Both the position numbers and the translations under genes were made by a program. The notes under the pieces are model-generated. The model was not told where the DNA came from. It searched no databases and saw only the letters and a list, made by a program, of their open reading frames with translations. Positions 4,590 through 49,650 of a DNA stretch of 64,000 nucleotides are shown here, in pieces (position 1 is the first letter of the stretch; every line of letters begins with the position of its first letter). Source of the stretch: Lepidodermella squamata (taxonomy: Eukaryota; Animalia; Gastrotricha); NCBI GenBank assembly GCA_047495785.1, contig JBLDXI010000024.1, forward strand, positions 5,146,001 through 5,210,000, given 5' to 3'.

Positions 4590-4606
4590 CGCTCCTGGGT
4601 GGGCTC

Positions 4607-4646
<40 letters not shown>

Positions 4647-5699: not shown

Positions 5700-5766
5700 A
5701 TTCGGTCGAAAGAAGGCTTGCAAGCGCTAATTAGCAGGCAGGAATGGGACTGAAGTGAAAAATGCA

Positions 5767-26943: not shown

Positions 26944-27022
26944 CAGCTTCTGATGCAGATTAGGGTTTGCAGATTTTAGCAGGAAGCTAATATATGTTTG
27001 CAATCGTGGACATTATTCGCTC

Positions 27023-27470
27023 AATTCCGGACTCATATTAGTTCCGTCCGGCCACCAAACGCCGGTTGCGCAATCCGAGGGTGGAAAGTGGACTTCGCGC
27101 AAAAAGCCAAGTCGAAAATTTCAGAAATTTCAAGGCCGCGTGCAGTAAAGTCAGAGGGCAAGTTTTCATTATTTAGGCAGTTTTCATACCGAAAGATAAT
27201 TCAGAAAATTCTCTATCAAATAGATATGAATTTCTCGCGCGAAAAATGAAAGTAAAAGCGTTATTCGCTCAGCTTAGTTCTTGAGGAGCGAGTTCGCGCG
27301 TTCTAAACTAGCGCGATAAATTTGGAGTACGCGTAAAACCTTTTTATTTTAATTTTTCGCGCGAGAACACCATATTCAATCGATAGAGAAATTTCCGAAT
27401 TATTTTTTAGTATTAGAACGACGAGAACCAGCGCTTGGGGGCCGGACGGAACTAATATGGGCCTGGAATT
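27023..27470. mobile_element. Foldback/MITE with outer and inner inverted repeats
   Basis: CATATTAGTTCCGTCCGGCC near 27034 inverted near 27440-27459; second imperfect inverted pair ~27181-27245 vs ~27354-27418; no TSD found. Confidence 0.65.
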
Positions 27471-27620
27471 CCGGAATAAAAATTGTTAACTATGTGCTGA
27501 CGATCAGCTATACCAAGCAAAACTGACTATTTGTTTCTTTATTTCAAAAGTTACACTTACTCACAGTTCTAACATAGGAGGCATATAGCTGACTAATGAA
27601 ATTATGGAATATGGGCTTGC

Positions 27621-29651
27621 TCATCGTTTGTTAGGTGGTGACATTTCATTGGCCAATACTGTCAGGCGTTTCCACTCCAAGATATTAATAACCAACATCG
27701 CAGTCATGCAAATAACGAGAAACGACAGCACGCAAGCTGTTGCGATAATTGCAGTTCGATAGCCATCGTTTGCCTCGGATATCTTTTCAATTGGCACTTT
27801 AGGGCAGATTCGGCCATCAACTTGCAAGATATAGATTAATGGTTAATGTAATCATTGAATAGGGAGTCGTGAAAATACCTGAATGACCTGGAATCATGGT
27901 TTCACAGGCCCCGTCATTCTGAGTATTCACGGATGGAAGGCACGAGTTCGGGCAAACCAAGCTACTGGCGAATCGGGACCAAAAACATGAGAAATCAGTT
28001 CCGCCAATCAGATCCAGCCCTATATTATAGCTCCAAATCGCGACGTCCTCAGATATTGTTGTATTTTGATCCTCATTAGTCCGGTAAAATATGAATAAAT
28101 ATTTCCCATCAGCTTCGCTGTTTGAATTGAAGCTAAAGTCTTCTGTTGATGCATTTCTTAGCAATTTGTAAATCGCCTCTCCCTTTGCCATAAGATTGGC
28201 AATCCTCCCAGAGCATCTTTGACTCAGGGTACTGTTAGCCCTTCTTTCAGGGCAGTTCTCCTCCAAATAACCGCGAACAGTTCCTACTGCAAGTCTAACT
28301 GCTTGGTCCATTTGATCGAGATACAGACTAGTTGGAATGTCGTCAATAGTAAGGATACTTATAGCTTTGGCTATTGCTTTTCTTTCTTCAGCTTCAGTCC
28401 CATCCGGTTGGGGTGTATAAGAGCAGTTGTTATTGCGGCACTGTAGCCACTCGCGAATCCATTCATGTTCCACCGCCTGGGTGGAGATTTGCTTGAGAGC
28501 CCACTGCTGAAATTCTTCGGCTATTACTCGAGTTTTCAGTTGTACCTGCAGTTTAAGAACTGAAATTCGCGGGCTTGTTAAATCGATTTTGAGCTGATCG
28601 TCTTCAACATGCGCACTTGATATGACAATGATTGGCCTACCATCCTTTAGACGGTTAAGTTTAGAAATTACAGGTTCCAACTGTTTTGGGTTGCAGAAAC
28701 AAATGAGGACGGCCGTTGAGTTCGCAACATTTTGAATGACTTTATCTATTGATGAGCCGGACCTATCCAGCTTCATCTTACTTTTTATACAAATTCCGAC
28801 CTGGCCCAGATACTGCTCGAGTAACTGGTAACCAGACTCCCCGTACAGCCCTGACGAATAGGCAACATGGACGCAATCGACTTTGAGAAAATTTGCCAAA
28901 TAATCAGCGATAGCCAAGGTTTGATGCACATCCGATGGGCTTAATCTTGCGTATAGCGGATACTTCTCCCGATTACTAAGAACAGACAGAGTTGTGCCAA
29001 AGTCGATCTTTGAATCAAAAGGATTAAATTAAAATGTTGATGCTTGGTTTCATACCACAGGGACATCGTACGTCCGATACAGCCTCGTCATTAGCTCTGA
29101 TTCCTCGTTGCCGAATGGGCCTAACGCAAAGGCCAGAGGAAATGTAATAGGACTTGAATTAATCATCATCCCCACAATATCAGGCAGTCTTCCCTGCATC
29201 TGATTCGAGTCATTTGCCGCCGATTCGGAAATCAAATTCACGAAATTACTACCGCGATAGTCGAGTGCTATCGCGGCGTCAGTTACAGCCAAATTCGGAA
29301 TCGAGCACGTGTCGATTATTAAATAACCTAGTTTGAGACCACCAAGGATAGAAGGATCTTTGTTTACAGCAGCTACACTTCGAATGAATTGTAGAAATAG
29401 CGCAACTGAGCTTGGAATTATGTCTCCGCAAGCATCTCTGAATGGTTTTCATTAACAGCAATTTTTGGCTGAGATAATTACACTCACGTGATATTCAGGG
29501 TGCTTCGCCGTTCGGGATTCTCCTTATGAAAAGGAAGATTGAGCATTAATGCAACATCCGGTACGCCATCTCGTGAGGCTTCAAGCGAATTTTTCACGGC
29601 ACCAAAGCTGCAAGGAGCCAAGAAAACTACCAAATTGAGAGTGAATAACAT
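27621..29651 (-). CDS. Gene A1: Venus-flytrap ectodomain + single TM + ~20-aa tail, no kinase
   Basis: Signal peptide; VNKDPSILGGLKLGYLIIDTCS; KYPLYARLSPSD; GLYGES..VGICI; TM AIIATACVLSFLVICMTAMLVI; stop soon after. Confidence 0.85.
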
Positions 29652-29719
29652 TAAATTTCTAAAAGTGAATAAATAATATGTTTAATAATTCATTTCGATT
29701 CTGTGGCTAGAAAGCACCC

Positions 29720-32700
29720 TTAAGCAAATAACTCCATCATTTCGGCGAAAGTAGCTCTTGAATTTGGAACTTCAGCCCAGCAATAAGTGGTTATTCTATC
29801 GTACCTAAACAGAAGTAAAGTTTATCATGTTACAGTTTTCGGCTGTGAGAGCTTACACAATTTGCGGCATTTCATCAGGTTTAGCTAGTCTTCCACCTTG
29901 AGAGACGAAAGCTTCCACTTCGCCATCTTGACGTCCTGAATACGGCTTCTTACCCTGGGAAAACATTTCCCAAACAACTACGCCGAAGGACCAGACATCG
30001 CCGAGTTGTAAATAGAAGTCGTAGCAGCCGTCTTCCTTGCAGTGAAGAGACTCTGGTGGATACCATCGAGCCGGTATGCTTCTCCAAGATGGAATTTTTG
30101 ATACTGTCTGATCATGACGCAAAATTTCAGCCAAGCCAAAATCTGAAATTTGTGGCGTCAATGTTGAATCGAGAAGTATATTCCGGCAAGATAGGTCGCG
30201 ATGGACACACCGATTTTGGGACAAGTGCTGCATACCTTGAATGATTCCTCGCGCAATTTTAAATAGTTCCTCGGTGTTAAGCTTGACGCTCTCAACGTAA
30301 GCTTTAAGGCTTCCATTCTGCATCCATGGAGTAATCATGTGCGGTTTATCCAAAAACGTTATTCCGATTAGATCGATCACATTAGGATGGTCAAACTCGG
30401 TAAGCAAGAGACTTTCATTTACAAGGTCCAGCCAAGAATTTGAGTTATGAATAATAGGTATTTTGATTGCGACCGGCACGTCGTTCACTTTCCCTGCAAT
30501 CCATTTTCTCACGCTTGCTCTGATTACCAAACTTGCTCCAGTTTCTGCTACTTTTACATCTTCGTAAGTTAGGCGTTGACTTGGCAGGAATCGCTCTTCC
30601 GCTAAATTCGCGAACACACCCTCAGACCCCATGCCAATGAGAAACTGTTTCAACCTGCTTGGCTTCTCTTCCAAGGTCGCAATGTAGCCCCCAGCTTCAC
30701 AACTGTCATCCGGAACTTCGATATTAATTACTTTCGGCGGCGTTCGTCTCGGACGACCTTGGAAATAGGAGTCTTGAATATAGAGACGTTCCATGCCTAC
30801 GGCCCCGATTGCGAAGCCATATTCAGGCAGCCTAGCAGTCTTCTTCAGCTTCATTTGACTCTCTGCAAGCCGCTGTTGAGTCGATTTGATTTTTCGCCGA
30901 CTTCTCAAGAAGAAAATGACAAAAATGATACAAATTATCAACAGCAAAAAGCCGAGGATCGCCCCAACAATAGCTGCCGTATTGTCATTTTTCGAAATAG
31001 CTGTGGTCGCTCCTCGTGTTTCGTTCATTGGCGTAGACGCAGTTGTTGCGATCGGTCGAATTACTGGACATTGCTTAATCGACATATTCAACTTCATGTC
31101 GCAAGTATCAGCAGGGCAGGTGGACGAGGTAAGGCCTGTAAGGCTGTCGAAGGCTGTTCTAGCTTCATTGTTGTCGATGACACGAATAGCCCGGTCCAGA
31201 AGGCTCCAGGTAGCAATTCTTGTCCACGTCGAATCACTGCCCATTGAGTAAAATGCATAGCTCGCAGGTGGACTGCCATCTTTCTCCCAGGAAAACGGCA
31301 ATCCCAGCGTGGAAGGGTCCGCTTCGTAAACACGTTGGTATCTCGAAAAATTTGCAACACTAAAATCTCTATTGAGCAAACAGTTAATTGTGGTCTCCTT
31401 TTTCACAGCACAGTAGTCTTTTGCCGCTGCCTCCAATGTTAGAACAGCTGAGTAAATCGCTGCATTCAAGTGGTAAGCAAAGCTGTTGAGTTTCATTTCG
31501 GCTACACTTCCGCCCTCTAATATAAGTTCTAATATAAGCAATATAAGTTCATGGGCTGCGGCGAGTTGCTAAGTATCATACCAGCGATCCACTCAGAGAT
31601 CCATGGTTCAATCGTTGAGTTCACAGGCCTCTTGGCTAACCAACTTCGAAACTCACTCTCACCCGGAATCAATCCAATGAATGGAGAAATCTTGATCAGA
31701 CCTATATTCACGGTTTCCCTGAAGTTTTCGAATTCTCCGTCAGGATCACTACAAGAGCGCCTGGATTGACCGAGTGGGGATTTCGGTTTTTTCAAACGTA
31801 CCTCGCCAAAATCAGTTTGACGCTTGTTTTTCGTCCCTGTACTGCTTTCGCAAGCTTCGATAATGTATCTGTTCGACAAAGGCAAACGATATGAGTAGCC
31901 GAGGCGTTGAGCGACTCGAAGGAAATTCTTGAATCCATTTCACCAGCAACACACAACCCAGTGTTTCTGAAAACGGTCCTCAGATCTTCGACAGCAGACC
32001 GGTCAATAAAATTAGTGTTGTCATAGATTACGAGCGGGCAAGTTTGATTAAAAGCATCGACCAATAAATCTGCAATAGCGAGTGCTAAGTTGACATCGTC
32101 CGGACTGGTTCTTGCGTATCGAGGAAACTTCGTTTTGTCACCAAGTTCGCTTAACGAGCCTCTGAAATCAATCTTTAAAAAGAAGTAACTCCGCCAATAT
32201 AAACGTTTCTCAACTAACCAAGGTCGTTTGGAAAGATTCAAACGCCGGCGCAAGGCTGAAGGCCATCTCAGAATTAGCAGGCCCGATGTAGATCGGGATG
32301 GTCATGCGAAGATCTCTCGCGGCTAACGCCCGTTGATCGAACAATTGTTCCAGCGCAATAGCAGAATTCGAGCAAGAGTCGATCATGTAGTAACCCAGGC
32401 TCAGATCCGTGACTCCCAAAAATCCATGATTGGAATTGAATTTTTCAAGGCACCAGCGAGCAAATGCCGATAAAACTGCCATGTCACGATTTAACTTGAC
32501 ACATTTTCCGCTGAAATTAAAAAAATTGAGGTTTCAAACAGCAGTGGCAATCAAAAGATCCGCACGGTGGAATTGAGACGACGATAGTTGTAATTTTTCG
32601 CTCGTGCGAAATGAGGCTGTTTATCTCCTTCAGAAGGGACCAATATGACCCCTTTTTCACGAGCTCCAAAAATAGCTCCAAGGAATGGGGGATAGTTTCA

Positions 32701-33381
32701 ATAATATGAATATATTCATGAAATGCCATGAAACCAGGAAATTCTTAGTTAAGTGCCAAAAAATGCAGACAAATTTGAGCACTTAGAATAAGGTTTCAAC
32801 AATTCAAAAATTATTTTTCCGGAATTTTTCTGACATAATTATCAATTTTAAGGGCTACGCAATATGAATTAGGTCATGGCATGTGAACACAGCATTGTGT
32901 ATCGCCCAATGTCTATGCGTACACATTGTGTGTGCGTGATTGGCTACTTGAACACAGTGCGCGCGTAACTTTGGCTGTGTGTCCCGCACTTTGTGTACGC
33001 ATAGCCATTGGGCGATACACTTTTCCTGTGTTCACAAAGCCACATCCTATTAATTAGCACCTAGTGAATATTCATATTTTCAAAACTTTTAAAACTTCTT
33101 GGCCTGGCCGAGTTACTTTCTTTGTTTTTAGCTGGTTTTAACCCCAGCTTGGAGCTGAAAATAGTTCGGGCGCGTGTGAGATATTTTGAGTTTCAACTCA
33201 GCAAATTCCTGGCCTTTTGATTTTCACTGTAGGTTTTCAGTCGTTTTTACCTTGAATTATCCTGGTAATGGATCGGCAACATGAAGCCCAGTCGAAACGG
33301 TTTGTTGACCCTCCATTCACTCTGATGAATCAGAGCAGTGCTCGCAAGGCACGGCAGTAACAACAATGCTACAAAATGCAT
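29720..33381 (-). CDS. Gene B1: Venus-flytrap receptor with atypical tyrosine kinase domain
   Basis: MHFVALLLLPCLA signal; LGYYMIDSCS, IGPANS, KFPRYARTSPDD, ILASD; TM; VAIK, HRDLSCRN, DFG, P.RW.PPE; last exon YDRITTYCW..RATF. Confidence 0.88.
32868..33050. mobile_element. Hairpin MITE in intron 1 of B1 (absent from the ~49-nt equivalent intron of B2)
   Basis: GTGAACACAG..GTGTATCGCCCAATG..TATGCGTACACA inverted as TGTGTACGCATA..CATTGGGCGATACAC..CTGTGTTCAC. Confidence 0.7.
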
Positions 33382-33463
33382 GCCAAGTTAATAAATTTTC
33401 TCCTAAATCTCCTCTACAAGCCAAGAAAACAACATTTCATCTTTCAGCCGGCACATATGCAAA

Positions 33464-36400
33464 TTATTCAATTGAGTCAGATGAGTATACAGTATCTTTG
33501 ATAATCTCCAACTGTTCTAATAGCTGCGAAAACGAAGGGCGGTCGCTTATCGCGATTTTCCAGCAGCTTTGCATGACTGCGTAACTATGTTGCAGTTTAT
33601 ATTTTTTGCAATTTTGAAAAAATCATCACAGACAGCTTACATTTCTTTAGGGCAGTTCTTGGGTGATTGGAGCGTCTCATTACGATCCAAAACTGCTGCA
33701 AATACGTCAGCTTCTTCTTTGATGTGGGGATAAGGCCGCTCGCCATAACTGTAAATTTCCCACAAAACAATACCGAACGACCATACGTCACTCTTTTCGC
33801 CAAATTTTTCGCTTTTTAGCGACTCGGGTGGGTGCCAGCGAATCGGCAACGGCCTGCTAGCGTTTGCAGGCTTATAATAGTCGCTTTCGTAAAGCTGTCG
33901 AGATAGACCGAAGTCAGCAATAATGGCTTGATTTTCCTCTCCCAGTAAGATGTTCCTGCAGGCCAGATCCCGATGGATGAACTTTTCGGATGAGAGATAT
34001 ACCATCGCCTTGCATATTTCGTTAGAGAATGTCCACAGTTGGCTTTGAGAAATGCCATTCTCTTTTGAATGTTTCAACAGAAATTTTAACAAGCTGCCGT
34101 TTCGCATGAAAGGAACGACGATAACAGGCCACTTCGATATCATTGCCATGCCTCGAAGCTGCAGCACATTTCCGTGCTTAAATGAAGCCATTAGCAGACC
34201 CTCTTGGATGAATTCAGCAACATCCGTCGGTTTCCTTGACTTGAGCATTTTTACAGCGACTCTCTCGTCGTGCAATTCTCCGGCGCAAACAACTCCGTAA
34301 TGTCCTGAAGCTATGCTTTTGTTTGATAATTTCAAACCGCTGGTTATAGAAAAGCCAACGAATTTCTTTGTCAGCTCTTCGCCAGCTTCGTATTGCTTAA
34401 GAGCAAGCTCAATTTGATCGCAATTTTTGAGCGGAATGTCGATCAAAGTCGCACTATTCCATATTTCATCCAGGGCTAGTTCGTCAAATCGTGCCTGTTT
34501 GCGGCTTGCGGCTGACTTGGACCTGCGGTTCAAGATGAAGAAAGTCATCGTTACAACGGTAAGACAGAAGAAAATCGAGCCAAATGAAATGGCGATGGTA
34601 AGCAGGACTCTCAAATCCCAAACTTTAACTGCTTCCTGGTTAGATGGAGTCACAACTTTACATACGTCAAGCTGGTTCGAGCAATTCGGTTGAGTGGTCA
34701 TCATATATGGTTTCTTACGAACGGCGTGACACGGAATATCAAAAAATGCATATTCGTACTCGAGTTGATTTGATTTGTGAAAAACTGTGCCATTTCCGCA
34801 TGAGTAGTTCGCAGCCGGAATATAGAACAATGAGTTGTTTTCGAAGTACTTAAGCCCACTGTCTTTCGTCCAATATGCGAGTTCTATCCAATGCGATTCC
34901 TTGCTGTTGTAATATGAAAAATTATATCGCCCCGCGACAGAAGTGCTGTCGTTGAACGAGAAATGTTCTCTTGTGCCGGGTACATTGAATCTAGCTTTCT
35001 TGATGTACCGCAGGAGCTCTCGGCCATCCAACAATAAACGAGCCCGTGTTTCTCCCGGGCATCTCTCCTTCAACGTTGCACTTCCCGGGGGACATCTTGC
35101 GTTGAGAAAATCGCGTAGGCCATACGCGGCAGCAAGGACAGCTTTTTGAATGCTCGATGTGTATTTGCTTAAAGGAAATGATGATTCAGCAACCGTTATG
35201 CCTATCAAATTCACGTAAATGTGTTCTGTCAGAATCCATACGGCATACATACCTGAGGGTGAAATGTTGAAATTCAAAGCATTTTTCTCCATTGCCCAGT
35301 TCCAAAAATCAGTTAGTGATACTGAAATAATATTTATAAGATATGTGCATTTTTCTATCAATTCGTAGCTGAATATTACCATCGTCTGTTCGGTCGTAAT
35401 CCAACGCCGTACTGCTTAAATAAGCTGGGAAAGTATAGTCTGGCTCCATGGCTAATGCTGCAGCTATGAAATCGTAATTGGCACCCGGTTTCGCGACCTC
35501 TTTATCATTCATATCGCCGTTCCAAAGGTGGCCAGCGATAACCAACGGCTTTGCTATGAAATTAACCTGCCGTAGCGCTAAATCAACTTTTGAAAATGCC
35601 CATCGCTCGCAGAAGCACACAATTGTCTCGACTTGAGATGCGTTCAACAGCTTCATGATTCGGTCAAAATTCGAAGAGTTTATTTTGACTGCTTGCCAAG
35701 AGCTCAAGTGATTTCGGATAACAGCATGAGCTGACTCTCCATAAGCGCCTTGACTGTAGAGGATAACTCCGCAGGATGATCTATTCAGACTCTTCAGCAA
35801 ATCCAAAATAGCCAAAATTTGATCTGCATCCGATGGAACTGTTCGCGAATATAGCGGATATTTGTCACGATTGTCGAACTCCACTGCAGTGGAGCCGAAA
35901 TCAATCACTGGCATATCCAAAGCTTGGGCTCGATCTAGAACAGCCGCTGTGACGTCGCTTTCTAATGCCCCTATTATAAATGGAGCGGTTTTGAAAAACG
36001 CTGCTTTGAGCATTTCTGAGTCCATGTCTTTAGCTACGACAATTCGGGTTGAGGCTATCTGAGCGCACCGGCGGCTTGCGTAAATTGGAAAGCTGCAGCT
36101 GTTAATCGAGTAGAAGCCAAGTTTCAAGCCGCCCAAAATTGAATCATTGTTGTTTACATTCGCTATCGCTCTGAAAAGCTGTGCTTGTAGTAAATTCCAG
36201 GCGGGAATAAATTTGTCGGCCGGGCAAAAACTGAGAGTGTCGTTTAAGAAATCGAAAGGTTCTACGAGCAGACTGGAATAATTGCTATATATTATACTAG
36301 ACACAGATTTGCATGTTGCATAAAAACCTCTCGGGTGATTGGTCGCTGTAAATTGAGCCGGACATGGGAACAACTGAAATGAAGTTGATATCTTGCAAAA

Positions 36401-36500
36401 AGTCTTTGCTTAGCTCTGATAGCTCAAAGGAAATTGAATATTTTTGCAAAATATTGAGTAGAAAAACCGACAGGATATTTAAAATTAACTGCTTAGCCAT
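33464..36500 (-). CDS. Gene C1: Venus kinase receptor-like (VFT + insulin-receptor-like Tyr kinase)
   Basis: NVNNNDSILGGLKLGFYSINSCS, KYPLYSRTVPSD, GAYGES; TM; SGHYGVV, VAVK, HRDLACRN, DFGLSRQLYESDYYK, LPIRW.PPES; last exon YAVMQSCW..RPSF. Confidence 0.9.
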
Positions 36501-37883
36501 CTATTAACTTGAAATCAACGGCTGTTTTTCTACAAATAAGGTATGCGGCTTGCTTATCTTTAAGCGATCTCATGCACCCACAGCATCATATGTCTTGTGT
36601 TAGGCAAATGATTATCACATGCATGCGCTTGCCATCATAAGCTCAAGCTAAATAAAGCAGGCCTTCGGCAGCAAAAAAGCACGTGGCAAACAACAGTGTT
36701 ATTATCCAAACCCACTTTTCAGAGCCGACCCGCTCCACGTTTTAAATAAGACTGTAGACCAGTGCTCCGCAAACGTTTTTCACCGCGGGCGAAAAGCCTC
36801 AGCTCCGGCTACAGGTGCAATGCAACCCTTCTCCGGCCGCACAAACGTTCTAGGACAACGTTGCTATTGTTAGATCGGTCGCAAGCAAAAGTTTTATAGC
36901 TCCAAGTAAATTCTTTTGTAGCAACTGTATGCCTGCGAGAGTATTATTGCAGTTAGCGCGGACGTGTTGATTAATTCCCTCTGGCCTTGAAAACGTGAAG
37001 ACGAGACAACTACGCCAAATACTTCCCCAAAAGTCAAGACTTTAGTCAAGAGAGGCTACTGTTGTTTGGGGTGAATTGGGCGAATTAGCCGGAAAGTGAT
37101 GTCGCTGCATTATTTTTGATAGCTCTAAAACTTTAAGTCTGATCATAGTAAAAATTTGTAAAAATGATCTTCAATAGATCCCCTACATCTGTAGAAAGTT
37201 GCAGCTAGTTATGTCCCATAATCCGTTAACGGCAAGCCGGTATTAACAGGTGAGTTTAGGCGGGTAAAAACGACCCATATGAATTGAGCTATCTGAAACC
37301 AATTGAAGGGCTTTGAGTTTGAATCACATTTTTTCCTTCGACCATTTTCTTTGGTGATAACAGAGAAGAAACCGCAACCCGAGGCGATTCACAGGTATGG
37401 CCAGGTAATTGCGCCCGAATTGCCCCGTGGAAAATTCGATTATAGGGGCGAATTGATCTTTTGGTTTTATTTGTGTATTTAATTATGGGTCTAAATAAGT
37501 GCACCACCTAAAATGAGGTTCCAGCACTAAATTGCAATTTGTAATTGAGTGCGTTTACCTAATTTGCAAACAGCTCGTACTAAATCATTTGGGCACCTAA
37601 ATATGAGTCCCAGCACTAAATATCAGCATTCAGTGCCTATTACAGTGCTCCCTCGATAAAAGCACTGGGTCGGGAGCCAGACCCGGTCTTTAAACAAGGG
37701 AAGGCTATAACGAGGGCTGTAATTGAATGCAGAAGCTAAAAATAGACCGTTTCTACGTCTTAAGATAGTTGCCATGCCAACGCGCAGAAAGAGACGGACA
37801 CGGATTACGTGTCATGACAAATTTCGCTCGCTGAAGGCTGTGAAACAATAACACTATGAATCATAAGTTCGTCGCAAAGTTTG

Positions 37884-37971
37884 TTTCTGAGTTGCCTGGG
37901 CGGCTTTGATTTGACTGGCTGGCCTTGTTTCTTTACTCTGATTTTAAGTCCTGCCTGGGGTTAAGGAACTC
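37884..37971 (+). repeat. 88-bp segment with an exact inverted copy at 40254-40341
   Basis: Direct base-by-base comparison. Confidence 0.9.
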
Positions 37972-39394: not shown

Positions 39395-39985
39395 AAACCG
39401 GACGCCATTAAATCGTCCCAAGATCGAGCCAGCAAAATCATCTACGGCGCTCATCGTTTGGCGGATCCGGCCCCGCTTCGGCATCGACTTAGATGGCTTA
39501 CTGTCAACCAGAAACATGCGGTACACCTATGCACATTCATGTAGAAGAGCCTGCACGAGATGGCGCCGGACGACTTCAAGTCGATGTTCAAACTGAGCGA
39601 TCGCAGCCACGGCTATAACTGTCGCAATTTCGAGCCGATGTTCAAGCCGAGCTTCACTACCGATACCAAGCGCGGCCAGCTGAGCTTGTCGTACAGGGGC
39701 CCACATCGGTGGAATGAAATGACTTCGATCGTTCACGACGCGCAATCTGCAAAGGCGTGTCGCGAAGCTGCGTACGCACACTTCAACGCCAGCTATGTCG
39801 AAAAACCATAGTTAATAATATGTAATATTTTGTATTTTGCTCTGTTTGTTGTTTCCTCTACAACATTTTCCTGTCCTAAATGTCTAAATGTGATCCTGTC
39901 CTGCAATTATATGTTGTTTTCCTTATACTTTGTCAAGCTTCCCTCTCTTGGGTGTAATAGCTTCTAAATAAATAAATAAATAAAT
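39395..39985 (+). mobile_element. 5'-truncated non-LTR retrotransposon 3' end (CR1/L2-group-like), degenerate
   Basis: QDRASKII..LRWL..M*K.L..P..F..RGQLSLSYRGP..WN ORF2 C-terminal pattern with an in-frame stop; (TAAA)n tail at ~39966-39984. Confidence 0.75.
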
Positions 39986-40069
39986 TTGTTGTTACCCAAG
40001 AAACTGTTCCCTATCCGCGGACAGTCGCCCCGCGAAAAACAGTCATGAGTCATGAAGGAGAGCACCGTT

Positions 40070-40256
40070 GATCACACCGTTGATAAGCGCCGTCTCACGT
40101 AGTCACATTTCCAATATTGAATATCTAGTGAAGGATCTTCGGGCTGATCTCATGCAGACTGACGAACTGGGCTCATTGGCCACACACATTGCGGCGGAAA
40201 TGGACCAGTTGGAGGCGTTGAAAAAGCTGTTGGAACTACAGCCGAGTCTACTAGAG
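40070..40256 (+). pseudogene. Fragment of the ankyrin gene (copy of 25436-25622)
   Basis: 6 differences in 187 bp by eye, 5 synonymous; no start codon, truncated. Confidence 0.85.
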
Positions 40257-40341
40257 TTCCTTAACCCCAGGCAGGACTTAAAATCAGAGTAAAGAAACAA
40301 GGCCAGCCAGTCAAATCAAAGCCGCCCAGGCAACTCAGAAA
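40254..40341 (-). repeat. Inverted copy of 37884-37971
   Basis: Exact reverse complement. Confidence 0.9.
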
Positions 40342-40924
40342 AAAAAAGAAAATAAAAAGGCCTACAACATATGCTTGCGATTGTGGATATTATTCCTGAA
40401 TAAAAAGTATTAAGAATTTGTTGGAAATCAGCTATACTTTAGAGAAAATCTGCAGACTTAATATATGAAATCTGGCAGGTCTGAAGTACAGTGTATGATT
40501 AAAAGATGATAGAGTGACACCCAGCCTCCAGCAGATTCAAATTTTCGACCAATCTTCGCGGACAGGAAAGTGACCATGAAACATTGCCTCATTATACCTG
40601 GCTTACAATTTTGCCAGCTCGGTCGGCCAATTTCGAGTAATTTTGATTAAATCATACCCGTTTATTTGTTAGGAAAATTCGGATAGGCATTTCGACAACC
40701 AACGGGTCTCTTTCAACAGGAAGATTAAAGAAAAAATCATTTAGTAATTAATACTGCTGTTTGTAGCCGAAATGACACTTCCGGGCGCAAGGTCAAATGA
40801 AGTTAATTTTGTATTATTTCCGATGTCATTTTCTATTATTGTACGATGCCGAATGATGGCGAAACCATTGCCGTAGAATAAGTCACCAGAAACTTAAGAT
40901 CGGATCCCGATGTTTGGGGATTGC

Positions 40925-42932
40925 TCATCGCTTGGTGGGTTTCTTTGGCCAATGTTGCAAGCATTGCACGATATAGAAAACCATCATCGCAGTCATGCAA
41001 ATTATGAGAAACGACAGTACACAAGCCGTTACGATAATCGCAGTTCGATAGCCATCGTTAGTCTGTGATACCGTTGCAGTCGACACTTTAGGGCAGATTC
41101 GGCCATCAACTTGCAAGATATACATTTACTTACATCATTGAATAGCGGATGATCAAAATACCTGAATGGCCTGGAATCATGACATCGCAGGCTCCATTGT
41201 TCAGAATAGTTACGGATGAAATGCGGCACGAATTCGGGCATAGCAAGCTGCTGGCGAATCGGGTCCAGAAACACGAAAAGTCAGTCCCGCCAATAAGAGT
41301 CAGCCCTTTATTATAGCTCCACATCGCGACTTCCTCAGATATTGTTACATTTTGATCCTCATTACTCCGGTAAAACTTGAATAAATATTTTCCATCAGCT
41401 TCCATGTTTGAATTTAAGCTAAAGCCTTGCGTTGATGTATTTCCTAACAATTTATAAATCGCCTCCCCCTTTGTCATAAGATTCGCAATCCGACCAGCGC
41501 ATCTTTCACGCAGAGTGCTGTTTGCCCTTTTAGGGCAGTTCTCCTCTAAATAACCTCGAAGAGTTCCTGCGGCAAGTCTAACTGCTTGATCCACTTGTTC
41601 GAGATACAGACTAGTTGGAATGTCGTCAATTGTAAGACTTCTTACACCTTGGGATATTGCTTTTCTTTCTTCAACGCCAGTCTCGAGCTGATAAGTTGTG
41701 TAAGAGCAGTTGTTATTGCGGCACTGCAGCCACTCACGAACCCATTCGTTTCCCATCCCCTGAGTGGAGATTTGCTTGTGAGCCCACTGCTGAAATTCTT
41801 CGGCTATTACTCGCGTATTCACCTGCAGTTTGAGAACTGAAACTCGGCGGCTCGTTAGATCAGCTGATTTCAGCTGATCGTCTTCAACATGTGCACTTGA
41901 TATTACAAGGATTGGCCTACCATCTTTCAAGCCGTTGAGAGTAGTAATCACGAATCTCAACTGTTTTGGATTGCAGAAACAAATAAGAATAGCTGCTGAG
42001 TTTGCCACACTCTGAATCACTTCATTTATTGACGAGTTAGACTTATCCAGTTTCGTCCTACTCATTATACAAATGCCGACCTGGCTGAGATGTTGCTGTA
42101 GTAACTGGTCCCCAGACTCGCCGTACAGCCCTGGAGAATAAGCAACATGGACGCAATTGACGTTGAGGAAATTCGCCAAATAATCAGCGATAGCCATCGT
42201 TTGATGCACATCCGATGGGCTTAATCTTGCGTACAGCGGATACTTCTCTCGATCGCTCAGAACGGACAGCGTCGTGCCAACGTCGATCTTGAAATGGAGA
42301 ACAATTGAGTTAAATTGTCGGCGCATGGTTTCATACCACTGGGACGTCGTACGTTCGATACAGCCTCGTCATTACTTCTGATTCCTCGTTGCCGAATGGG
42401 CCTAACGCGAAAGCGACAGGACCACCAAGAGGAGATGCTTTATATGTCATCCCGAAGAGATCAGTCAGTATGCTCAGCCTCCCATTCGAGACATCTGCCG
42501 AGGAGTAGGGGAAATAATCCAAGAACGCAGTACCACGGAAGTCGAGGATTAACGTGAGTTCAGTTAGAGCTAAGTTCGGAATCGAGCACGTGTCGAATAT
42601 AGTATAACCTAATTTGAGACCGTCAAGAAGAGAAGAATCGTTGTTTACAGCAGCTACACTTCGAATGAATTGTAGGCATAGCGCAAGTGAACTTGGGATT
42701 ATTTCTCCGCAAGCATCTCTGAATTGTTCTAATCAACTGTTAATTTTCGATGAGATAATTACACTCACGTGTTATTTATGGTACTGCGCCGTTCGGGATT
42801 CTCCTTATGAAACGGAAGACTGAGCAGCAATGTAATATCCGAAGCGCCATCTCGCGATATATCAAGCGGACCTTTATTGGCACCAAAGCTGCATGGAGCC
42901 AAAATAACTGCCAAAATCAGCGAGAATAACAT
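40925..42932 (-). CDS. Gene A2: paralog of A1 (VFT + single TM, no kinase)
   Basis: Same exon structure and motifs as A1; ends ...WPKKPTKR*. Confidence 0.85.
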
Positions 42933-42977
42933 TAAATTTCTAAAAGAAAAAAAACTCATTCTTGTTTCAATACTGAT

Positions 42978-45900
42978 TCATTCCGATTCAATAACTTGGC
43001 GAAAATTCCAAACAAAAAACTCCATCATTTCGGTGAAATTAGCTCTTGACCTAAGATCTTCAGCCCAGCATTGAGTGGTTATTCTATCGTACCTAAACAG
43101 TAACTAAGTTTTTTTTTAATGTTTTTGACTGTAAGAACTTACAAAATGTTTGGCATTTCATCCGGTTTAGCCAGTCTTCCGCCTTGAGAGACGAACGCTT
43201 CGACTTCGCCATCTTGACGTCCTGCATACGGCTTCTTACCCGGAGAAAACATTTCCCAAACAACAACGCCGAAAGACCAGACGTCGCCGAGGTTTAAATG
43301 AAAGTCGTAACAGCCGTCTGCCTTGCAATGAAGAGACTCTGGTGGATACCATCGAGCCGGTATGTTTCTCCAAGATGGAATTTTCGATACTGTCTGATCA
43401 TTTCGCAAAATTTCAGCCAGGCCAAAATCTGCAATTTTAGGGGTTAAGGTTGAATCGAGAAGTATATTCCGGCAAGATAGGTCGCGATGCACGCAGCGAT
43501 TTTGCGACAAGTGCTGCATACCATTGGCGATTCCACTCGCAATTTTAAATAGTTCTTCTGTGTTAAGCTTGACGCTCTCTACGTAAGCTTTAAGGCTCCC
43601 ATTCTGCATCCATGGAGTAATCATGTGCGGTTTATCCAGAAAAGTTATTCCGATCAGATCGATCACATTAGAATGGTCAAACTCGGTAATCAAGAGACTT
43701 TCATTGACAAGGTCCAGCCAAGAAATTGATTCATGGCGAATAGGTATTTTGATTGCGACCGGTACATCACTTAATTTCCCAACAATCCACTTTCTCACGC
43801 TCGCCCTGAGGACCAGGCTTGCTCCAGTTTCTGCTATTTTCACATCTTCGTAAGTTAAGCGCTGAATTGGCAGGAATCGCTCTTCCGCCAAATTCGCGAA
43901 CACACCCTCAGACCCCATGCCAATGAGAAACTGTTTCAACCTGCTAGGTTTCACGTCCAACGCCGCAATATAACCGCCAGCTTCACAATTGTCAGCCGGA
44001 ATTTCGATATTAATTACTTTCGGTGGTGTTCGTCTCGGGCGACCTTGGAAATAGGAGTCTTGAATGTAGAGCCGTTCCATACCAAGTGCCCCGATTGCGA
44101 AGCCGTATTCAGGCAGCCTAGCAGTCTTCTTCAGCCTCATCTGACTCTGTGCTAGCCGCTGTTGAGTCCTTTTGACTTTTTGCCGACTTCTCAAACAGAA
44201 AATTATGAAAACAATCGAAATGACCAGCAGCAAAAAGCCGAGGATCGCCCCAACGATAGCTGCCGCATTGTCAGCTTTCGACGTAGTTTGACATGCTGCG
44301 GTCGTTGCGTTTGTTTCGTTAATTGGCGTAGTCACCGATGTTGCGATCGGTCGAATTACTGGACACTGCTTGATCGATATATTCATAGCATTCATTTTCC
44401 GGTCGCAAATATCAGCGGGGCAGGTGGAAGAGGTAAGGCCTGTAAGGCTGTCGAAGGCTGTTCTAGATTCATTGCTATCGATGACACGAATAGCGCGTTC
44501 CCGAAGGTTCCAGGTAGCCATTCTTGTCCACATTGAATCACTACCCATTGAGTAAAATGCATAGCTTGCTGGTGGACTTCCATCTTTCTCCCAAGAAAAC
44601 GGCAGTCCCAGTGAGGTAGGGTCCATTTCGTAAACATGGCTTTCTAACCTCGAAGAATTTGCGAAAACATCATCTCTGTTGACCAAGCAGTTGAATAAGT
44701 TTTCTTTTTTAGCAGCACAGTATTCTTTCCCCACTTTCTCCATAGTTAGAATGGCTGAGTAAATCGCCGCACCCAAATGATAAGCAAAGCTGTTTAATTT
44801 CATTTCCGCCACACTTCCGCCCTCTAAAACAATAGCAATCATTGCTAGGAATTGCATATAGGCTAATTATCATACCATCGATCCACTTAGAGAGCCAAGG
44901 TTCAGAGTCCAACACAGGCCATTTGGCTAGCCAACTTCGAAAATCACTCTCACCCGGAATCGATCCAAGGAAAGGCGAAATCTTGACTAGACCTACATCC
45001 ACTTTCTCCCTGAAGTTTTCAAATCCTCCGTCAGGATCACTACAAGAGCGCTTGTATTAACTTGGTGAGGAGCAAGGGTTTATCTAGTCACCCTCAACCC
45101 ACCCACAAAATTTGGCTACCCAACCCCAAACTTTCGAGCTTTTTGCTATTTTTGAGCTTTTTAGGTCCATTTTTTACCCCATTTTACGACTACCCACCCT
45201 CAATTTCAAAAGGCTAGATAAACCCTTGGTGAGGATTGAACTTTTTTCAAACGCACCTCGCCAAAACAATTTTGATGCTTGTTTTTCGTCCTCTGAGTGC
45301 TTTCATAAGTTCGGATAATGTATTTGTTCGACAAAGGCAAACGACGTGAGTAGCAGAGGTGTTGAGTGCCTGGAAGGGAGTTTTGGAATCTATTTCACCG
45401 GCAACACACAGCCCAGTGTTTCTGAAGGCGGTCCTTAGATCTTCGACTGCGGATCGGTCAATAAAATTCGTGTCGTCATAGATTACGAGCGTGCACGTTT
45501 GATTAAAAGCATCGACTAATAAATCTTCGATAGCAATTGCTAAGCTCTTATCGTCTGGGCTGGTCCTTGCGTATCGAGGATACTTCGTTTTGTCGCCTAG
45601 CTCGCTGAACGAGCCGCTGAAATCAACCTGTAAATGAACAACTTAACCATGTCAATACCGGCATTTCCCAACTAACCAAGGTCACTTTGGCAGATTCAAA
45701 AGCTGGTGCAAGGGTGAAAGCGAGCTCAGAATTTGCAGGTCCGATGTAAATCGGGATGGTCATGCGAGGATATGTTGCGGCTAGCGCGCTTTGATTAAAA
45801 AAATGTTCCAGCGCTATAGCAGAATTTGAGCAAGAGTCGATCATGTAAAAACCGACTTTTTGGCCCGAAAGGCCCAAAAATCCGTAATTAAAATTGAATT

Positions 45901-46166
45901 TTTCAAGGTACCAGCGAGCAAATGCCGACAAAACTGCCATGTCGTGGTTTAACTTTCCACATTTTCCGCTGAAATTTAAAACTTTAGGTTTTATGCTTGA
46001 TTGCCAGCAGTGTTTACCTTGATTTATTATCCTGATAGTGGATCGGCAACACGAAGCCCAACCGCAATGGTGTACTTGCCCCGAAATCAGTCTGTTGCAC
46101 CAAGGCCTGTTGCACCAAGGCATTACTCGCAAGGTACGGCAGTAACAATAATACTACAAAATGCAT
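42978..46166 (-). CDS. Gene B2: paralog of B1 (VFT + atypical Tyr kinase)
   Basis: MHFVVLLLLPYLA; same motifs as B1; last exon YDRITTQCW..VIESE*. Confidence 0.88.
45073..45228. mobile_element. hAT-like MITE in a B2 intron
   Basis: Perfect 15-bp TIR CAAGGGTTTATCTAG; 8-bp TSD GTGAGGAG/GTGAGGAT; absent from the equivalent B1 intron. Confidence 0.85.
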
Positions 46167-46239
46167 GCCAAGTAAATAATATTTCTCCTAAATCTTCTCT
46201 ACAAGCCAAATAAACAACATTCCATATGCATATTATTGA

Positions 46240-46636
46240 CACGTTAACTGCCAAAAATTGACTGCGAGATCCGACATTTGGATCCAAATCTTGGGTCTGC
46301 CAAAAAGTCCTTTTTCGGGTCAACAATGCGTCGCAAGGCGAAATGCCTGACGGCAAAGTGTAGACCATGGTCCGGCGGTTCTTTCGACACCAAACTCGGG
46401 TCCTCAAGGTGTGAGCAGGTCTTTAGAAATGACTGTGAAATAGCGTCGAAATTTTGGATTATAGCCAAAAATCAGACCCAAGAAATGTCAAAAGAACCGC
46501 CGGGTCGTGGCCTACACTTTGCCGTCAGGCTTTTAGCTCTACAACGCATCGTTGACCCGAAAAAAAGACTTTTTTACAGACCCAGGATTTGGATCCAAAT
46601 ATCGGATCTAGCAGTCTATTTTTGGCAGTTAAAGTG
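46240..46636. mobile_element. piggyBac-like MITE between C2 and B2
   Basis: ~150-bp imperfect TIRs starting CAC(G/T)TTAACTGCCAAAAA; flanks TTGA/TTAA; absent from copy 1. Confidence 0.82.
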
Positions 46637-49600
46637 TTAAATCGACTCAGAAGAGTGTGCGGTATCTCTGTTCATCTCCAACTGTTCTAATAGCTGCGAA
46701 AACGAAGGTCGTTCGTCTATTGCGAGTTTCCAACAACTTTGCATGATCGCGTAACTATTTTGCAGTTTAGATTATTTGAAAAATCAACACAAACAGCTTA
46801 CATTTCGTTAGGGCAGTTCTCGGGTAGTTGGAGCATCTCGTTACGATCCAAAACAGCTGTAAAAACGTCGGCTTCTTCCTTGATATGGGCATATGGCCGC
46901 TCGCCATGGCTGTAAATCTCCCACAAAACAATGCCAAACGACCATACATCACTCTTTTCGCCAAATTTCTCGCTTCGAAGCGACTCTGGTGGGTGCCAGC
47001 GAATCGGCAATGGTCGGCTTGCGTTTGCAGGCTTATAATACTCGCTTTCGTAAAGCTGGCGAGATAGACCGAAGTCAGCAATAATAGCTTGGTTTTCATC
47101 GCCAATTAAGATATTCCTACAGGCCAGATCCCGATGGATGAACTTTTCAGATGAGAGATAGACCATAGCCTTGCATATTTGGCAAGAGAATGTCCACAGT
47201 TTGCTTTGAGAGATGCCATTCAATTCTGAATGCTTCAAGAGAAATTTCAGCAAGCTGCCGTTTTGCATGAAAGGAACAACGATAACGGGCCAGTTCGACA
47301 TCATAGCCATGCCTCGAAATCGCAGCACATTTTCGTGTTCAAACGAAGCCATTAACAGACCCTCTTGGATGAATTCGACGACATCCGCCGGCTTCCTAGA
47401 CTTGAGGATTTTTACGGCGACTCTCTCGTCCAGCAATTCTCCGGCATAAACAACCCCATAATGTCCTGTAGCTATGCTTTTTTTTGATAATTTCAAACCG
47501 CTGGTTATGACAAAACCAACGAATTTCTTTGTCAGCTCTTCGCCAGCTTCGTATTGCTCAAGAGCAACTTCGATTTGATCGCAGTTTTTCAGCGGGATCT
47601 CGATCAAATTCGCACTATTCCATATTTCATCCAGGGCTTGTTCGTCTAATCGTCCATGTTTGCGGCTTGGGGCTGTCGTGAGCCTGCGGTTTAGCATGAA
47701 GAAAGTCGCTGTTGCAACGGTGAGACAGAGAAAAATCACCCCCAGAGAGATGGCGATAGTAATCAGGACTGCCAGATCCCAACCTTTAATGGCTTCCTGT
47801 CTAGATGGAGTCACAACTTTACATACGTCGAGCTGATCCGAGCAATTCGGTTGAGTGCTCATCTTATAGGTTTTCTTACGAACTGCATGACAAGGAGTAT
47901 TAAACAATCCATATCCGAACCAGAGTTGATTTGACTTGTGCACAACTGTGTCATTGCCACATGTGTAGTTCGCGGCCTGAATAAGGAACATTGAGCTGTT
48001 TCCGAAGTACTTAAGCCCACTGTCTTTCGCCCAATATGCGAATTCTATCCATTGCGATTTCTCGCTGTTGTAATATGAAAAATTATATCGCCCCGCGACA
48101 GAATTGTTTTCGTTGAACGAGAAAGTTTCTCTGATGCCGGGTACATTGAATTTAGCTTTTTCGATGTACGGCTGGAGCTCTCGGCCATCCAGCAATAAGC
48201 GATCCAGCGTTGCCCTCGGACATCTATCCTTCAACGCTGCACTTCTTGGGGGACATCTTGCGTTGAGAAAATCACGTAAGCCATACACAGCAGCAAGGAC
48301 AGCTTTTTGAATGCTCGAAGTGTATTTGCTCACAGGAAATGATGATTCATCAACCGTTATGCCTATTAAATTCTGGTCAATATTCCTTAAAAATCCATAC
48401 AGCATCCATACCTGAGGGTAAAATGTTGAACTGCAGAGTATTTTTCGCTATCGCCCATTTCCAAAACTCAATTAGTGAAGCTGAAAAATTATTGTTCAGA
48501 TGTGTATAATTTTCTATCAATTCGAAGCTAAATAGTATTACCCTCGCCTGATTGGTCGTAATCCAACGCCGTGCTGCTTAAATAAGCTGGGAAAGTGTAG
48601 TCTGGCTCCATGGCTAATGCTGAAGCTATGAAGTCGTAATTGGATCCCGGTTTTGTGAAATCTTTATCGTTCATATCGCCGTTCCAAAGGTGGCCAGCGA
48701 TAACTAAAGGCTTTGCTCGGAAATCAACCTGCCGCAGCACTAAATCAACTTTTGAAAATGCCCATCGCTCACAGAGGCACACAATTGTCTCGACTTGTGA
48801 TGCGTTTAACAGCTTCATTATTTGGTCAGCATTCGAAAAGGTAATTTTGACCGCTTGCCAAGAGCTCAAGTGATTTCGGATAACACCGTAAGCGGACTCT
48901 CCATATGCGCCTTGACTGTATAGTATAACCCCGCAGGACGATCTATTCAGACTTTCCAGCAAATCCAAAATAGCCGAAATTTGATCTGCATCCGAAGGAA
49001 CTGTTCTTGAATATAGCGGATATTTATCTCGGTTGTCAAACTCCACTGCAGTGGAGCCGAAATCAATCACAGGCATATCTAGAGTTTGGGCTCGATCTAG
49101 AACAGCCGCTGTGACGTCGCTCTCTAATGCCCCTATTATCAATGGAACGGGATCGTCCAATTTGAAAATGGAATCAATTTCTTTAGCTAAGGCTATTCGG
49201 TTTACCGCAAGTCGTGCGAGCCGTCGGCTGGCATAAATTGGAAAGCTGCAGCTGTTAATCGAGTAAAAGCCAATTTTCAAGCCGCCCAAAATTGAGCAAT
49301 TGCTGTTTACATCCGCTATCGCTCGGAAAAGCTGCGCTTGTAGTAAATTCCAGGCGGGGAAAAATTTGTCCTCCGAGCAAAAGCTGAAAGTGTCGTTGAA
49401 GAATTCTAGAGGATATATGAACATACTGGAATACTTGCTGTTAAATTACTAGACATAGTAACATTTTGTATAAAAAAAACCTCTCGGGTGAAGCACTTAT
49501 GTCGCTGTAAATCGAGCCTGATCTGGGAATAATTGAAATGAAGTTGATATCTTGCAAATCCGTATTGTAGGGCAGCTCAAAGGGAATCGAATATTTGTTA

Positions 49601-49650
49601 AAAATAAGGAGAAAAGCTGACAGGGTATTTAGAATTGACACCTTAGCCAT
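46637..49650 (-). CDS. Gene C2: paralog of C1 (VFT + insulin-receptor-like kinase)
   Basis: Same motifs; DFGLSRQLYESEYYK; ends ..AHSSESI*. Confidence 0.9.

What the first reader, a model, noticed from the sequence alone, without database searches (positions are those of the whole stretch)
27621..49650. Duplicated three-gene Venus-flytrap receptor cassette: canonical kinase + atypical kinase + kinase-less partner
Seen: two collinear copies of C->B->A on the minus strand. Each gene encodes a signal peptide, a class-C-GPCR-type VFT, a Cys-containing stalk and one TM helix. C has an insulin-receptor-like kinase (YxxxYY loop), B an atypical kinase, and A only a short tail. Established: Venus kinase receptors (VFT + InsR-like kinase, e.g. 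Schistosoma SmVKR1/2) exist, and VFT receptors work as dimers, often heterodimers (GABA-B1/B2, T1R). Inference: the three co-inherited genes are subunits of a heteromeric, small-molecule-sensing RTK system (catalytic subunit, substrate/allosteric subunit, co-receptor or decoy). I know of no description of this triad.
Basis: partly seen in the sequence, partly recalled or inferred. Interest (0 to 1): 0.88.

Follow-up and report, generated by a model that had tools for sequence, protein, structure and literature searches.

The report
Duplicated flytrap receptor gene triad
A small invertebrate genome carries two tandem copies of a tightly packed row of three related "Venus flytrap" surface receptor genes (one with a normal tyrosine kinase, one with an odd kinase, one with none); all six are intact and conserved, but whether they work together as one receptor is still untested.

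Summary
Six intact minus-strand genes lie in the order C2-B2-A2 then C1-B1-A1, inside two blocks of about 9.2 kb that are 82-84% identical.

- **Shared layout:** each protein has a signal peptide, an mGluR-type flytrap, a cysteine-bearing stalk and one membrane helix.
- **C:** a complete tyrosine kinase with a YxxxYY loop.
- **B:** a kinase with a degenerate glycine loop and no loop tyrosines.
- **A:** ends 14-21 residues after the helix. No kinase or 7TM exon lies downstream of it.
- **Selection:** all three copy pairs are under purifying selection (dN/dS 0.27-0.37).
- **Packing:** gaps between genes are 45-82 bases, with one 470-base exception caused by an insertion. Each start codon has an AG splice acceptor just upstream, so the row looks like an operon.

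These are not canonical Venus kinase receptors. The flytrap is closest to mGluRs rather than GABA-B, the kinase is closest to MET/TAM rather than the insulin receptor, and the VKR flytrap motif is absent. A's flytrap nests inside the flytrap-kinase clade, so A probably lost its kinase.

The heteromer idea is plausible but untested. The only relatives found elsewhere are solitary genes. The scan had already noted flytrap-kinase clusters elsewhere in this genome. Verdict: a new variant of a known kind, of moderate interest.

The parts
46637..49650 (-). C2: flytrap receptor with a complete tyrosine kinase, 933 aa, 5 exons. Membrane helix at 47775-47707, kinase at about 47529-46682.
   Evidence: Gene model; Pfam ANF_receptor + PK_Tyr; helix and kinase coordinates.
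42978..46166 (-). B2: flytrap receptor with an atypical kinase, 923 aa, 6 exons. Membrane helix at 44260-44192, kinase at about 43867-43017.
40925..42932 (-). A2: kinase-less flytrap receptor, 618 aa, 4 exons. Membrane helix at 41038-40970, followed by a 14-aa tail.
33464..36500 (-). C1: flytrap receptor with a complete tyrosine kinase, 938 aa, 5 exons. Membrane helix at 34608-34540, kinase at about 34368-33512, activation loop Y-E-S-D-Y-Y.
29720..33381 (-). B1: flytrap receptor with an atypical kinase, 901 aa, 6 exons. Intron 1 is 740 nt and holds a high-copy repeat. Intron 3 (31749-31801) is seen spliced out in run X2.
27621..29651 (-). A1: kinase-less flytrap receptor, 624 aa, 4 exons. Membrane helix at 27755-27687, followed by a 21-aa tail. 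A convergent ankyrin gene ends about 370 nt beyond its stop codon.
27613..36924 (.). Duplicated block, copy 1.
   Evidence: blastn against 40917-50068, 82-84% identity.
40917..50068 (.). Duplicated block, copy 2.
36925..40916 (.). Spacer between the two triads. It has no long ORF and no kinase or 7TM remnant. It holds a 187-nt ankyrin-gene fragment at 40070-40256.
33382..33463 (-). 82-nt gap between C1 and B1, with an AG acceptor (…CTTGTAG) 40 nt before the B1 ATG.
29652..29719 (-). 68-nt gap between B1 and A1, with ATTAAA and an acceptor (…CTTTTAG) 7 nt before the A1 ATG. The same arrangement sits in the 45-nt gap between B2 and A2 (42933-42977).

Best explanation
This is an old three-gene row of lineage-specific single-pass Venus-flytrap receptors that a later segmental duplication copied whole. 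The family has the same layout as Venus kinase receptors but is built from different parent branches: an mGluR-type flytrap and a MET/TAM-like kinase.

- **C** is a normal ligand-gated receptor tyrosine kinase. A small, probably amino-acid-like ligand closes the flytrap, the dimer rearranges, and the kinases phosphorylate each other on the YxxxYY loop.
- **B** keeps the catalytic residues but has lost the glycine loop and the loop tyrosines, so it is regulated differently or signals weakly.
- **A** is a family member that lost its kinase. It sits in the membrane as a bare flytrap with an altered pocket.

The tiny gaps between genes and the splice acceptors before each ATG suggest that each triad is transcribed as one unit and resolved by spliced-leader trans-splicing. 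That would make the three proteins in the same cells.

In that setting A, and perhaps B, most likely act by pairing through the flytrap dimer face with kinase-competent relatives, or by soaking up ligand, and so tune C's output.

Shown here: the anatomy, the duplication, the selection and the origin of the parts. Inferred: co-transcription, ligand class, pairing and the modulatory role.
For: - **Genes and packing:** six intact genes with homologous GT-AG introns. Gaps are 82, 68 and 45 nt. Acceptors lie before the ATGs.
- **Duplication:** the block duplication is 82-84% identical, and dS of 0.34-0.43 is similar in all three gene pairs, which fits one event.
- **Selection:** dN/dS is 0.31 for C, 0.27 for B and 0.37 for A. 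Fisher p for dN below dS is at most 3e-16.
- **Age of the three types:** A, B and C are only 25-30% identical in the ectodomain, so they are much older than the duplication.
- **Common origin:** the flytraps of A, B and C fall with the flytrap-kinases P0248 and P0002 in one clade (SH-aLRT 99), with A next to B (83). A and B share a phase-0 intron before the IDFG motif. B and C share a phase-2 intron near the end of the kinase.
- **Pocket:** C and B keep the Ser165 equivalent, while A has Asn there. The Thr188 position holds Thr in C and A and Ser in B, and the Asp208 equivalent is kept in all three. The Tyr236 equivalent is kept in C and A.
- **Kinase motifs:**
- **Transcription:** spliced B1 and unbroken A1 coverage appear in a probable RNA run.
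- **Precedent:** VKRs dimerise and heterodimerise (PMC2680970; PMC4038586).
Against: - No protein interaction, co-expression or polycistronic RNA was shown.
- The reads tool was limited to one call, on assembled contigs.
- Spliced-leader trans-splicing in this genome rests on other agents' notes.
- Tandem order and joint duplication need no functional link.
- The nearest relatives with context are solitary genes.
- B keeps every catalytic residue and could be fully active.
- The A+B sister grouping joins two long branches.
Confidence: 0.55

Rival explanations
1. Obligate heteromer. C, B and A are subunits of one receptor complex with divided labour, like GABA-B1/B2 or ErbB2/ErbB3: a catalytic subunit, an allosteric or substrate subunit, and a ligand-binding or decoy subunit.
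For: - Operon-like packing.
- All three types are kept in both copies under purifying selection.
- Degeneration is complementary: A's pocket has Asn at the Ser165 position, B has no glycine loop or loop tyrosines, and C is complete.
- SmVKR1/2 heterodimers exist.
Against: - No interaction data.
- C has everything needed to work alone as a homodimer.
- The related flytrap-kinases P0002/P0512 and P0248 are solitary genes.
- No triad was found in any collection searched.
Confidence: 0.2
2. Independent receptors. The row is only a record of tandem duplication. Each protein forms homodimers with its own ligand, and A is a ligand sink or clearance receptor in the manner of NPR-C, without contacting B or C.
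For: - The three types are deeply diverged, at 25-30% ectodomain identity, as expected for different ligands.
- Ectodomains evolve faster (omega 0.32-0.39) than kinases (0.17-0.19).
- Relatives elsewhere are solitary.
- This genome holds further flytrap-kinase clusters according to earlier notes.
Against: The very short gaps between genes argue for shared transcription. A has lost the most conserved amino-acid-binding serine, which fits a non-binding partner better than a ligand sink.
Confidence: 0.2
3. These are ordinary Venus kinase receptor (VKR) orthologues that expanded in this lineage.
For: The architecture is the same (flytrap, one helix, tyrosine kinase). C has the YY site and a conserved Ser165 equivalent. 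Tandem VKR pairs exist in Lepidoptera (PMC3703292).
Against: - The best solved flytrap matches are all mGluR or T1R3. GABA-B is not among the best 60.
- The VKR flytrap motif GY(V/I)WFLPxWL is absent.
- The best solved kinase matches are MET for C and Eph/Syk for B. The insulin receptor is not among the best 60.
- The named relatives of the clade's kinase are Mer/Tyro3. No VKR or insulin receptor appears in the best 120, even with a length range that admits them.
Confidence: 0.04
4. A, or one whole copy, is a decaying remnant, or the two copies are misassembled haplotypes.
For: A lacks a kinase. Copy 1 carries a repeat insertion in B1 intron 1, and copy 2 carries an insertion between C2 and B2.
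Against: - All six reading frames and all splice sites are intact.
- dN/dS is well below 1.
- The insertions lie in non-coding DNA.
- 17% divergence with a 4-kb spacer on one contig, at single-copy depth of about 50, is not allelic.
Confidence: 0.01

Closest known systems
Venus kinase receptors (VKR; SmVKR1/2, AmVKR)
   Same: The layout is the same: an extracellular flytrap, one membrane helix and an intracellular tyrosine kinase with a YY autophosphorylation site. VKRs dimerise and are activated by amino acids, SmVKR1/2 can heterodimerise, and tandem VKR pairs exist in Lepidoptera (PMC2680970, PMC3703292, PMC4038586).
   Different: VKR flytraps group with GABA-B and VKR kinases with insulin receptors. 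Here the flytrap is mGluR-like, the kinase is MET/TAM-like, and the VKR motif GY(V/I)WFLPxWL is missing. I found no description of a membrane-anchored kinase-less VKR family member as a conserved gene.
Choanoflagellate flytrap-type receptor kinases (UTK12 of Monosiga, RTKS of Salpingoeca)
   Same: They are cited as independent examples of a VKR-like architecture outside the VKR family (PMC3703292).
   Different: They belong to a different lineage. No relationship was tested here, and no triad or kinase-less partner is reported for them.
Natriuretic peptide clearance receptor NPR-C, versus NPR-A and NPR-B (from my own knowledge)
   Same: It has a flytrap-fold (ANF_receptor) ectodomain, one membrane helix and a short tail, and is a paralogue of full-length signalling receptors. 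This is the best functional analogue for A.
   Different: NPR-C's partners are guanylyl cyclases that bind a peptide ligand. A belongs to a tyrosine-kinase family with an mGluR-type flytrap.
GABA-B1/B2 and T1R heterodimers; ErbB2/ErbB3 (from my own knowledge)
   Same: These are obligate or preferred heterodimers in which one subunit has lost ligand binding or catalysis. They are the model for a division of labour among C, B and A.
   Different: In those cases the pairing has been shown experimentally. Here it is only inferred, and B still has all catalytic residues, unlike ErbB3.
Spliced-leader operons of nematodes, tunicates and other small invertebrates (from my own knowledge)
   Same: Genes on the same strand lie about 50-100 nt apart, each with an unpaired 3' splice acceptor before its ATG.
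   Different: Neither a polycistronic RNA nor leader addition was shown for these genes. Operons made of paralogous receptor genes are unusual.

Membership tests
Venus kinase receptor (VKR) family | Architecture: signal peptide, flytrap, one membrane helix, tyrosine kinase. | tested here: met
   C and B meet it: Pfam ANF_receptor + PK_Tyr, and helix and gene models. A does not.
Venus kinase receptor (VKR) family | The flytrap belongs to the clade next to GABA-B receptors (PMC2680970). | tested here: not met
   The best 60 solved matches for the C and A flytraps are mGluR1-8, T1R3 and CaSR, with no GABA-B. This is a ranking, not a tree.
Venus kinase receptor (VKR) family | Flytrap motif G-Y-(V/I)-W-F-L-P-x-W-L, present in most VKRs (PMC3703292). 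| tested here: not met
   A pattern scan of all six proteins finds nothing. The homologous place reads like the mGluR 'SDGW' region.
Venus kinase receptor (VKR) family | Serine equivalent to mGluR1 Ser165 in the pocket. | tested here: met
   Ser in C1, C2, B1 and B2; Asn in A1 and A2 (in register with the alignment).
Venus kinase receptor (VKR) family | Kinase closest to insulin receptors (PMC2680970). | tested here: not met
   The best solved matches are MET, then Src/Abl, CSK and MuSK for C, and Eph and Syk for B. The insulin receptor and IGF1R are not in the best 60. The named relatives of the clade are Mer/Tyro3, with no VKR or insulin receptor in the best 120. No tree with VKRs could be built, because no VKR sequence was on hand.
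Venus kinase receptor (VKR) family | Catalytic motifs GxGxxGxV, VAxK...E, HRDxxxRN, DFG and the YY site. | tested here: inconclusive
   C has all of them except the first Gly. B lacks the glycine loop (A-E-T-G-A-S-L-V) and the YY site, and keeps the rest.
Class C GPCR | Seven-helix 7tm_3 domain after the flytrap. | tested here: not met
   There is one helix only. A 7tm_3 query gives no tblastn match anywhere near the genes.
Receptor guanylyl cyclase (ANF_receptor + kinase-like + cyclase) | Guanylate cyclase domain after the kinase-like domain. | tested here: not met
   C and B stop 15-40 aa after the kinase, and the next ATG follows within 45-470 nt. The kinases carry tyrosine-kinase signatures (HRDLACRN, PIRWHPPE).
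Spliced-leader operon | Same-strand genes about 100 nt apart or less, with a 3' splice acceptor before each downstream ATG. | tested here: met
   Gaps are 82, 68 and 45 nt (470 where an insertion sits). AG acceptors lie 0-40 nt before the ATGs.
Spliced-leader operon | Leader found on downstream messages, and one primary transcript. | not tested
   The single reads call gave only assembled contigs. Trans-splicing in this genome is reported only in other agents' notes.

The most novel reading that the evidence does not exclude
Each triad is one trans-spliced operon that encodes the subunits of an obligate heteromeric small-molecule sensor. A or B supplies or gates ligand recognition and C supplies catalysis. 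That would be a GABA-B-like division of labour reinvented in a receptor tyrosine kinase family that itself arose independently of VKRs.
Probability: 0.15. Interest if true: 0.8.

Novelty: new variant of a known kind. Interest (0 to 1): 0.45.

Why it matters
Flytrap-plus-kinase receptors are known as VKRs. This locus supports the view, already noted elsewhere in this genome, that the same design was assembled a second time from mGluR-like and MET/TAM-like parts.

It adds two things. The first is a conserved membrane-anchored family member that lost its kinase. The second is a member with an atypical kinase, held next to a complete one in operon-like packing.

If the three proteins pair, this would be a compact natural system for studying how flytrap dimers control single-pass kinases, and how decoy and pseudo-active subunits evolve. 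If they do not pair, it is a tidy example of receptor family expansion with kinase loss.

Tried and rejected
1. **Automatic gene models.** A codon-bias dynamic programme mis-set two junctions in C. I replaced it with junctions required to be GT-AG, in frame and homologous in both copies.
2. **Search for close relatives.**
   - The full HMMER search of 1.84 billion representatives with A found nothing above about 30% identity over more than a fragment.
   - The long top hits are fused calls of fish CaSR-like gene arrays and similar, not triads.
   - P0266, which has the same length as A, is the flytrap of a class C GPCR.
3. **Search for triads in other genomes.**
   - Two metagenome scans found no A relative and only generic kinases without flytraps.
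   - An alignment of all flytrap types was too diverse to search with.
   - Contigs of P0002/P0512 and P0248 show solitary genes.
4. **Organism.** UFC1 is too conserved to place it, with about 80% identity to molluscs, a brachiopod and a spider. Other agents' 'probably a rotifer' was not checked.
5. **Atlas feature searches** gave only generic kinase and ANF_receptor clusters.
6. **Findings search by sequence** was blank.
7. **Structure prediction was not run.** The tools take only unspliced window stretches, and no multi-chain prediction is offered, so it could not test pairing.
8. **Receptor guanylyl cyclase and class C GPCR readings** were rejected.
Full report
**Observation.** The long minus-strand ORFs between 27.8 and 49.5 kb fall into two sets. 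A self-tblastn shows each piece has one partner at 72-83% identity in the other set and only about 30% identity to the other types. Kinase matches are confined to C and B. blastn aligns 27613-36924 to 40917-50068 at 82-84% identity, through exons and introns alike. Pfam gives ANF_receptor plus PK_Tyr_Ser-Thr for C and B, and ANF_receptor alone for A.

**Gene models.** I set each junction by requiring GT-AG, an open frame and the same position in both copies. All six genes are then open from ATG to stop.

| Gene | Coordinates | Length |
|---|---|---|
| C2 | 49650-46637 | 933 aa |
| B2 | 46166-42978 | 923 aa |
| A2 | 42932-40925 | 618 aa |
| C1 | 36500-33464 | 938 aa |
| B1 | 33381-29720 | 901 aa |
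| A1 | 29651-27621 | 624 aa |

- Introns are 46-65 nt, with two exceptions. B1 intron 1 is 740 nt and carries a repeat present at 50-75 times single-copy depth. B2 intron 3 is 217 nt.
- Run X2, guessed to be RNA, has a contig that skips exactly 31749-31801, which is my B1 intron 3. It covers A1 from end to end with no coverage in the flanks. That is modest evidence that B1 and A1 are transcribed.

**Protein anatomy.** Each protein starts with a hydrophobic signal-like segment. It has a flytrap, a stalk with 3-5 cysteines and one strong membrane helix.

- **A.** It stops 14-21 residues after the helix in both copies. Downstream of A1 a convergent ankyrin-repeat gene ends about 370 nt away. Downstream of A2 lie 4.4 kb without long ORFs. 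Neither place holds a kinase or 7tm_3 remnant, even at E=10-50. So A is truly kinase-less.
- **C kinase.** It has VAVK, the helix-C Glu, HRDLACRN, DFG, the Y-E-S-D-Y-Y loop and PIRWHPPE. It lacks only the first glycine of the glycine loop.
- **B kinase.** It keeps VAIK, Glu, HRDLSCRN and DFG. Where the glycine loop should be it reads A-E-T-G-A-S-L-V, it has no tyrosine in the activation loop, and it carries small insertions. In line with this, the Pfam match for B begins later in the profile than for C.

**Selection and age.**
- Between the copies, dN/dS is 0.31 for C, 0.27 for B and 0.37 for A.
- Kinase domains are the most constrained part, at 0.17-0.19.
- The excess of synonymous change is highly significant in each pair; for A, p=3e-16.
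- dS is alike in all three pairs (0.34-0.43), and short introns are 74% identical. This fits one block duplication.
- The ectodomains of A, B and C are only 25-30% identical, so the three types are far older than the duplication.

**Origin of the parts.**
- **Flytraps.** The best solved matches for the C and A flytraps are mGluRs, T1R3 and CaSR.
- **C kinase.** The best solved matches are MET, then Src/Abl, CSK and MuSK.
- **B kinase.** The best solved matches are Eph and Syk.
- **Full-length relatives.** The only ones in public protein sets are unnamed metagenome proteins, P0002 and P0248. They are 39-40% identical to C in the kinase and about 25% in the flytrap.
- **Wider kinase search.** A search with P0248's kinase, whose length window admits VKRs and insulin receptors, lists choanoflagellate kinases, JAKs and Mer/Tyro3, but no VKR or insulin receptor.
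- **VKR definition.** VKRs are defined by a flytrap next to GABA-B and a kinase next to insulin receptors (PMC2680970), and by the motif GY(V/I)WFLPxWL (PMC3703292). That motif is absent here.

I therefore treat these genes as a separate flytrap-kinase family with a VKR-like design. This agrees with earlier notes of this scan on other loci of the same genome, but it rests on rankings, not on a tree that includes VKRs.

**How A arose.**
- In a tree of flytraps, A, B and C group with P0248, P0002 and P0255 (SH-aLRT 99), apart from GPCR-type flytraps. A sits next to B (83), although both are long branches.
- A and B share a phase-0 intron just before the IDFG motif.
- All three share a phase-2 intron after the first strand.
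- B and C share a phase-2 intron near the kinase end.
- Four of the five lineages in the clade carry a kinase, so the simplest history is that A lost its kinase.

**Pocket.** Residues were read in register with the mGluR7 alignment.

| mGluR1 position | C | B | A |
|---|---|---|---|
| Ser165 | Ser | Ser | Asn (both copies) |
| Thr188 | Thr | Ser | Thr |
| Asp208 | Asp | Asp | Asp |
| Tyr236 | Tyr | Phe | Tyr |

An amino-acid-like ligand for C is thus a reasonable inference. A's pocket is altered.

**Packing.** The gaps are 82 nt (C1 to B1), 68 nt (B1 to A1) and 45 nt (B2 to A2). The C2 to B2 gap is 470 nt because of a roughly 400-nt insertion with inverted ends. Each ATG has an AG acceptor 0-40 nt upstream. 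Other agents report spliced-leader trans-splicing and operon-like clusters in this genome. I could not test leader addition here.

**Triads elsewhere.**
- None was found.
- P0002/P0512 sits alone on a 32-kb contig among glycosyltransferase and peptidase genes.
- P0248 sits alone on 6.4 kb.
- Two metagenome scans gave no relative of A and no flytrap-bearing kinase.
- These relatives are distant and the collections hold no close kin, so this is weak evidence against conservation.
I did not check it.

**Reading.**
- Established here: the anatomy, the block duplication, purifying selection on all six genes, the non-VKR affinities and the likely loss of the kinase in A.
- Inferred: co-transcription, an amino-acid-like ligand, and pairing of A or B with C.
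- Flytrap receptors and VKRs work as dimers, and SmVKR1/2 heterodimerise, so modulation of C by a kinase-less or atypical paralogue made in the same cell is the most economical mechanism. Independent action, with A as a ligand sink like NPR-C, is not excluded.

**Verdict.** This is a new variant of a known kind, of moderate interest.

Noticed in passing
window 149-5850: 35 tRNA genes on both strands, arranged as two tandem copies of a unit of about 3345 bp.
   Followed up: no
window 40070-40256 vs 25436-25622: A 187-nt piece of the ankyrin-repeat gene that lies tail to tail with A1 recurs downstream of A2. It is 97% identical, far more alike than the 82-84% of the receptor block. This points to a later conversion or a second event.
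   Followed up: partly
window 46225-46640: An insertion of about 400 nt with inverted ends (GGATCCAAAT ... ATTTGGATCC) lies between the C2 stop and the B2 ATG and is absent from copy 1. It looks like a small non-autonomous transposon.
   Followed up: no
window 32542-33240: A repeat inside B1 intron 1 has a depth of 2500-3800 in DNA run X1, against about 50 for its surroundings. It is absent from B2.
   Followed up: no
window 18925-20103 (+) and 20330-21481 (+): Two tandem, nearly intron-free genes with a weak Neur_chan_LBD match followed by hydrophobic segments. They are divergent Cys-loop channel-like proteins.
   Followed up: no
window 25269-27249 (+): An ankyrin-repeat gene in several ORF pieces, convergent with A1.
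   Followed up: no
window 52998-54656 (-): A 552-aa ORF with an acidic stretch and no Pfam match.
   Followed up: no
window 9020-10945 (-), 58561-59865 (-), 62690-63337 (-): Three RhoGAP-domain ORFs in one window, the first of them with an SH3 domain.
   Followed up: no
L006 10001-12458: A metagenome contig carries two tandem flytrap-only gene pieces. The second is 51% identical to A over its most conserved 74 residues, but the contig ends there, so its architecture is unknown.
   Followed up: partly
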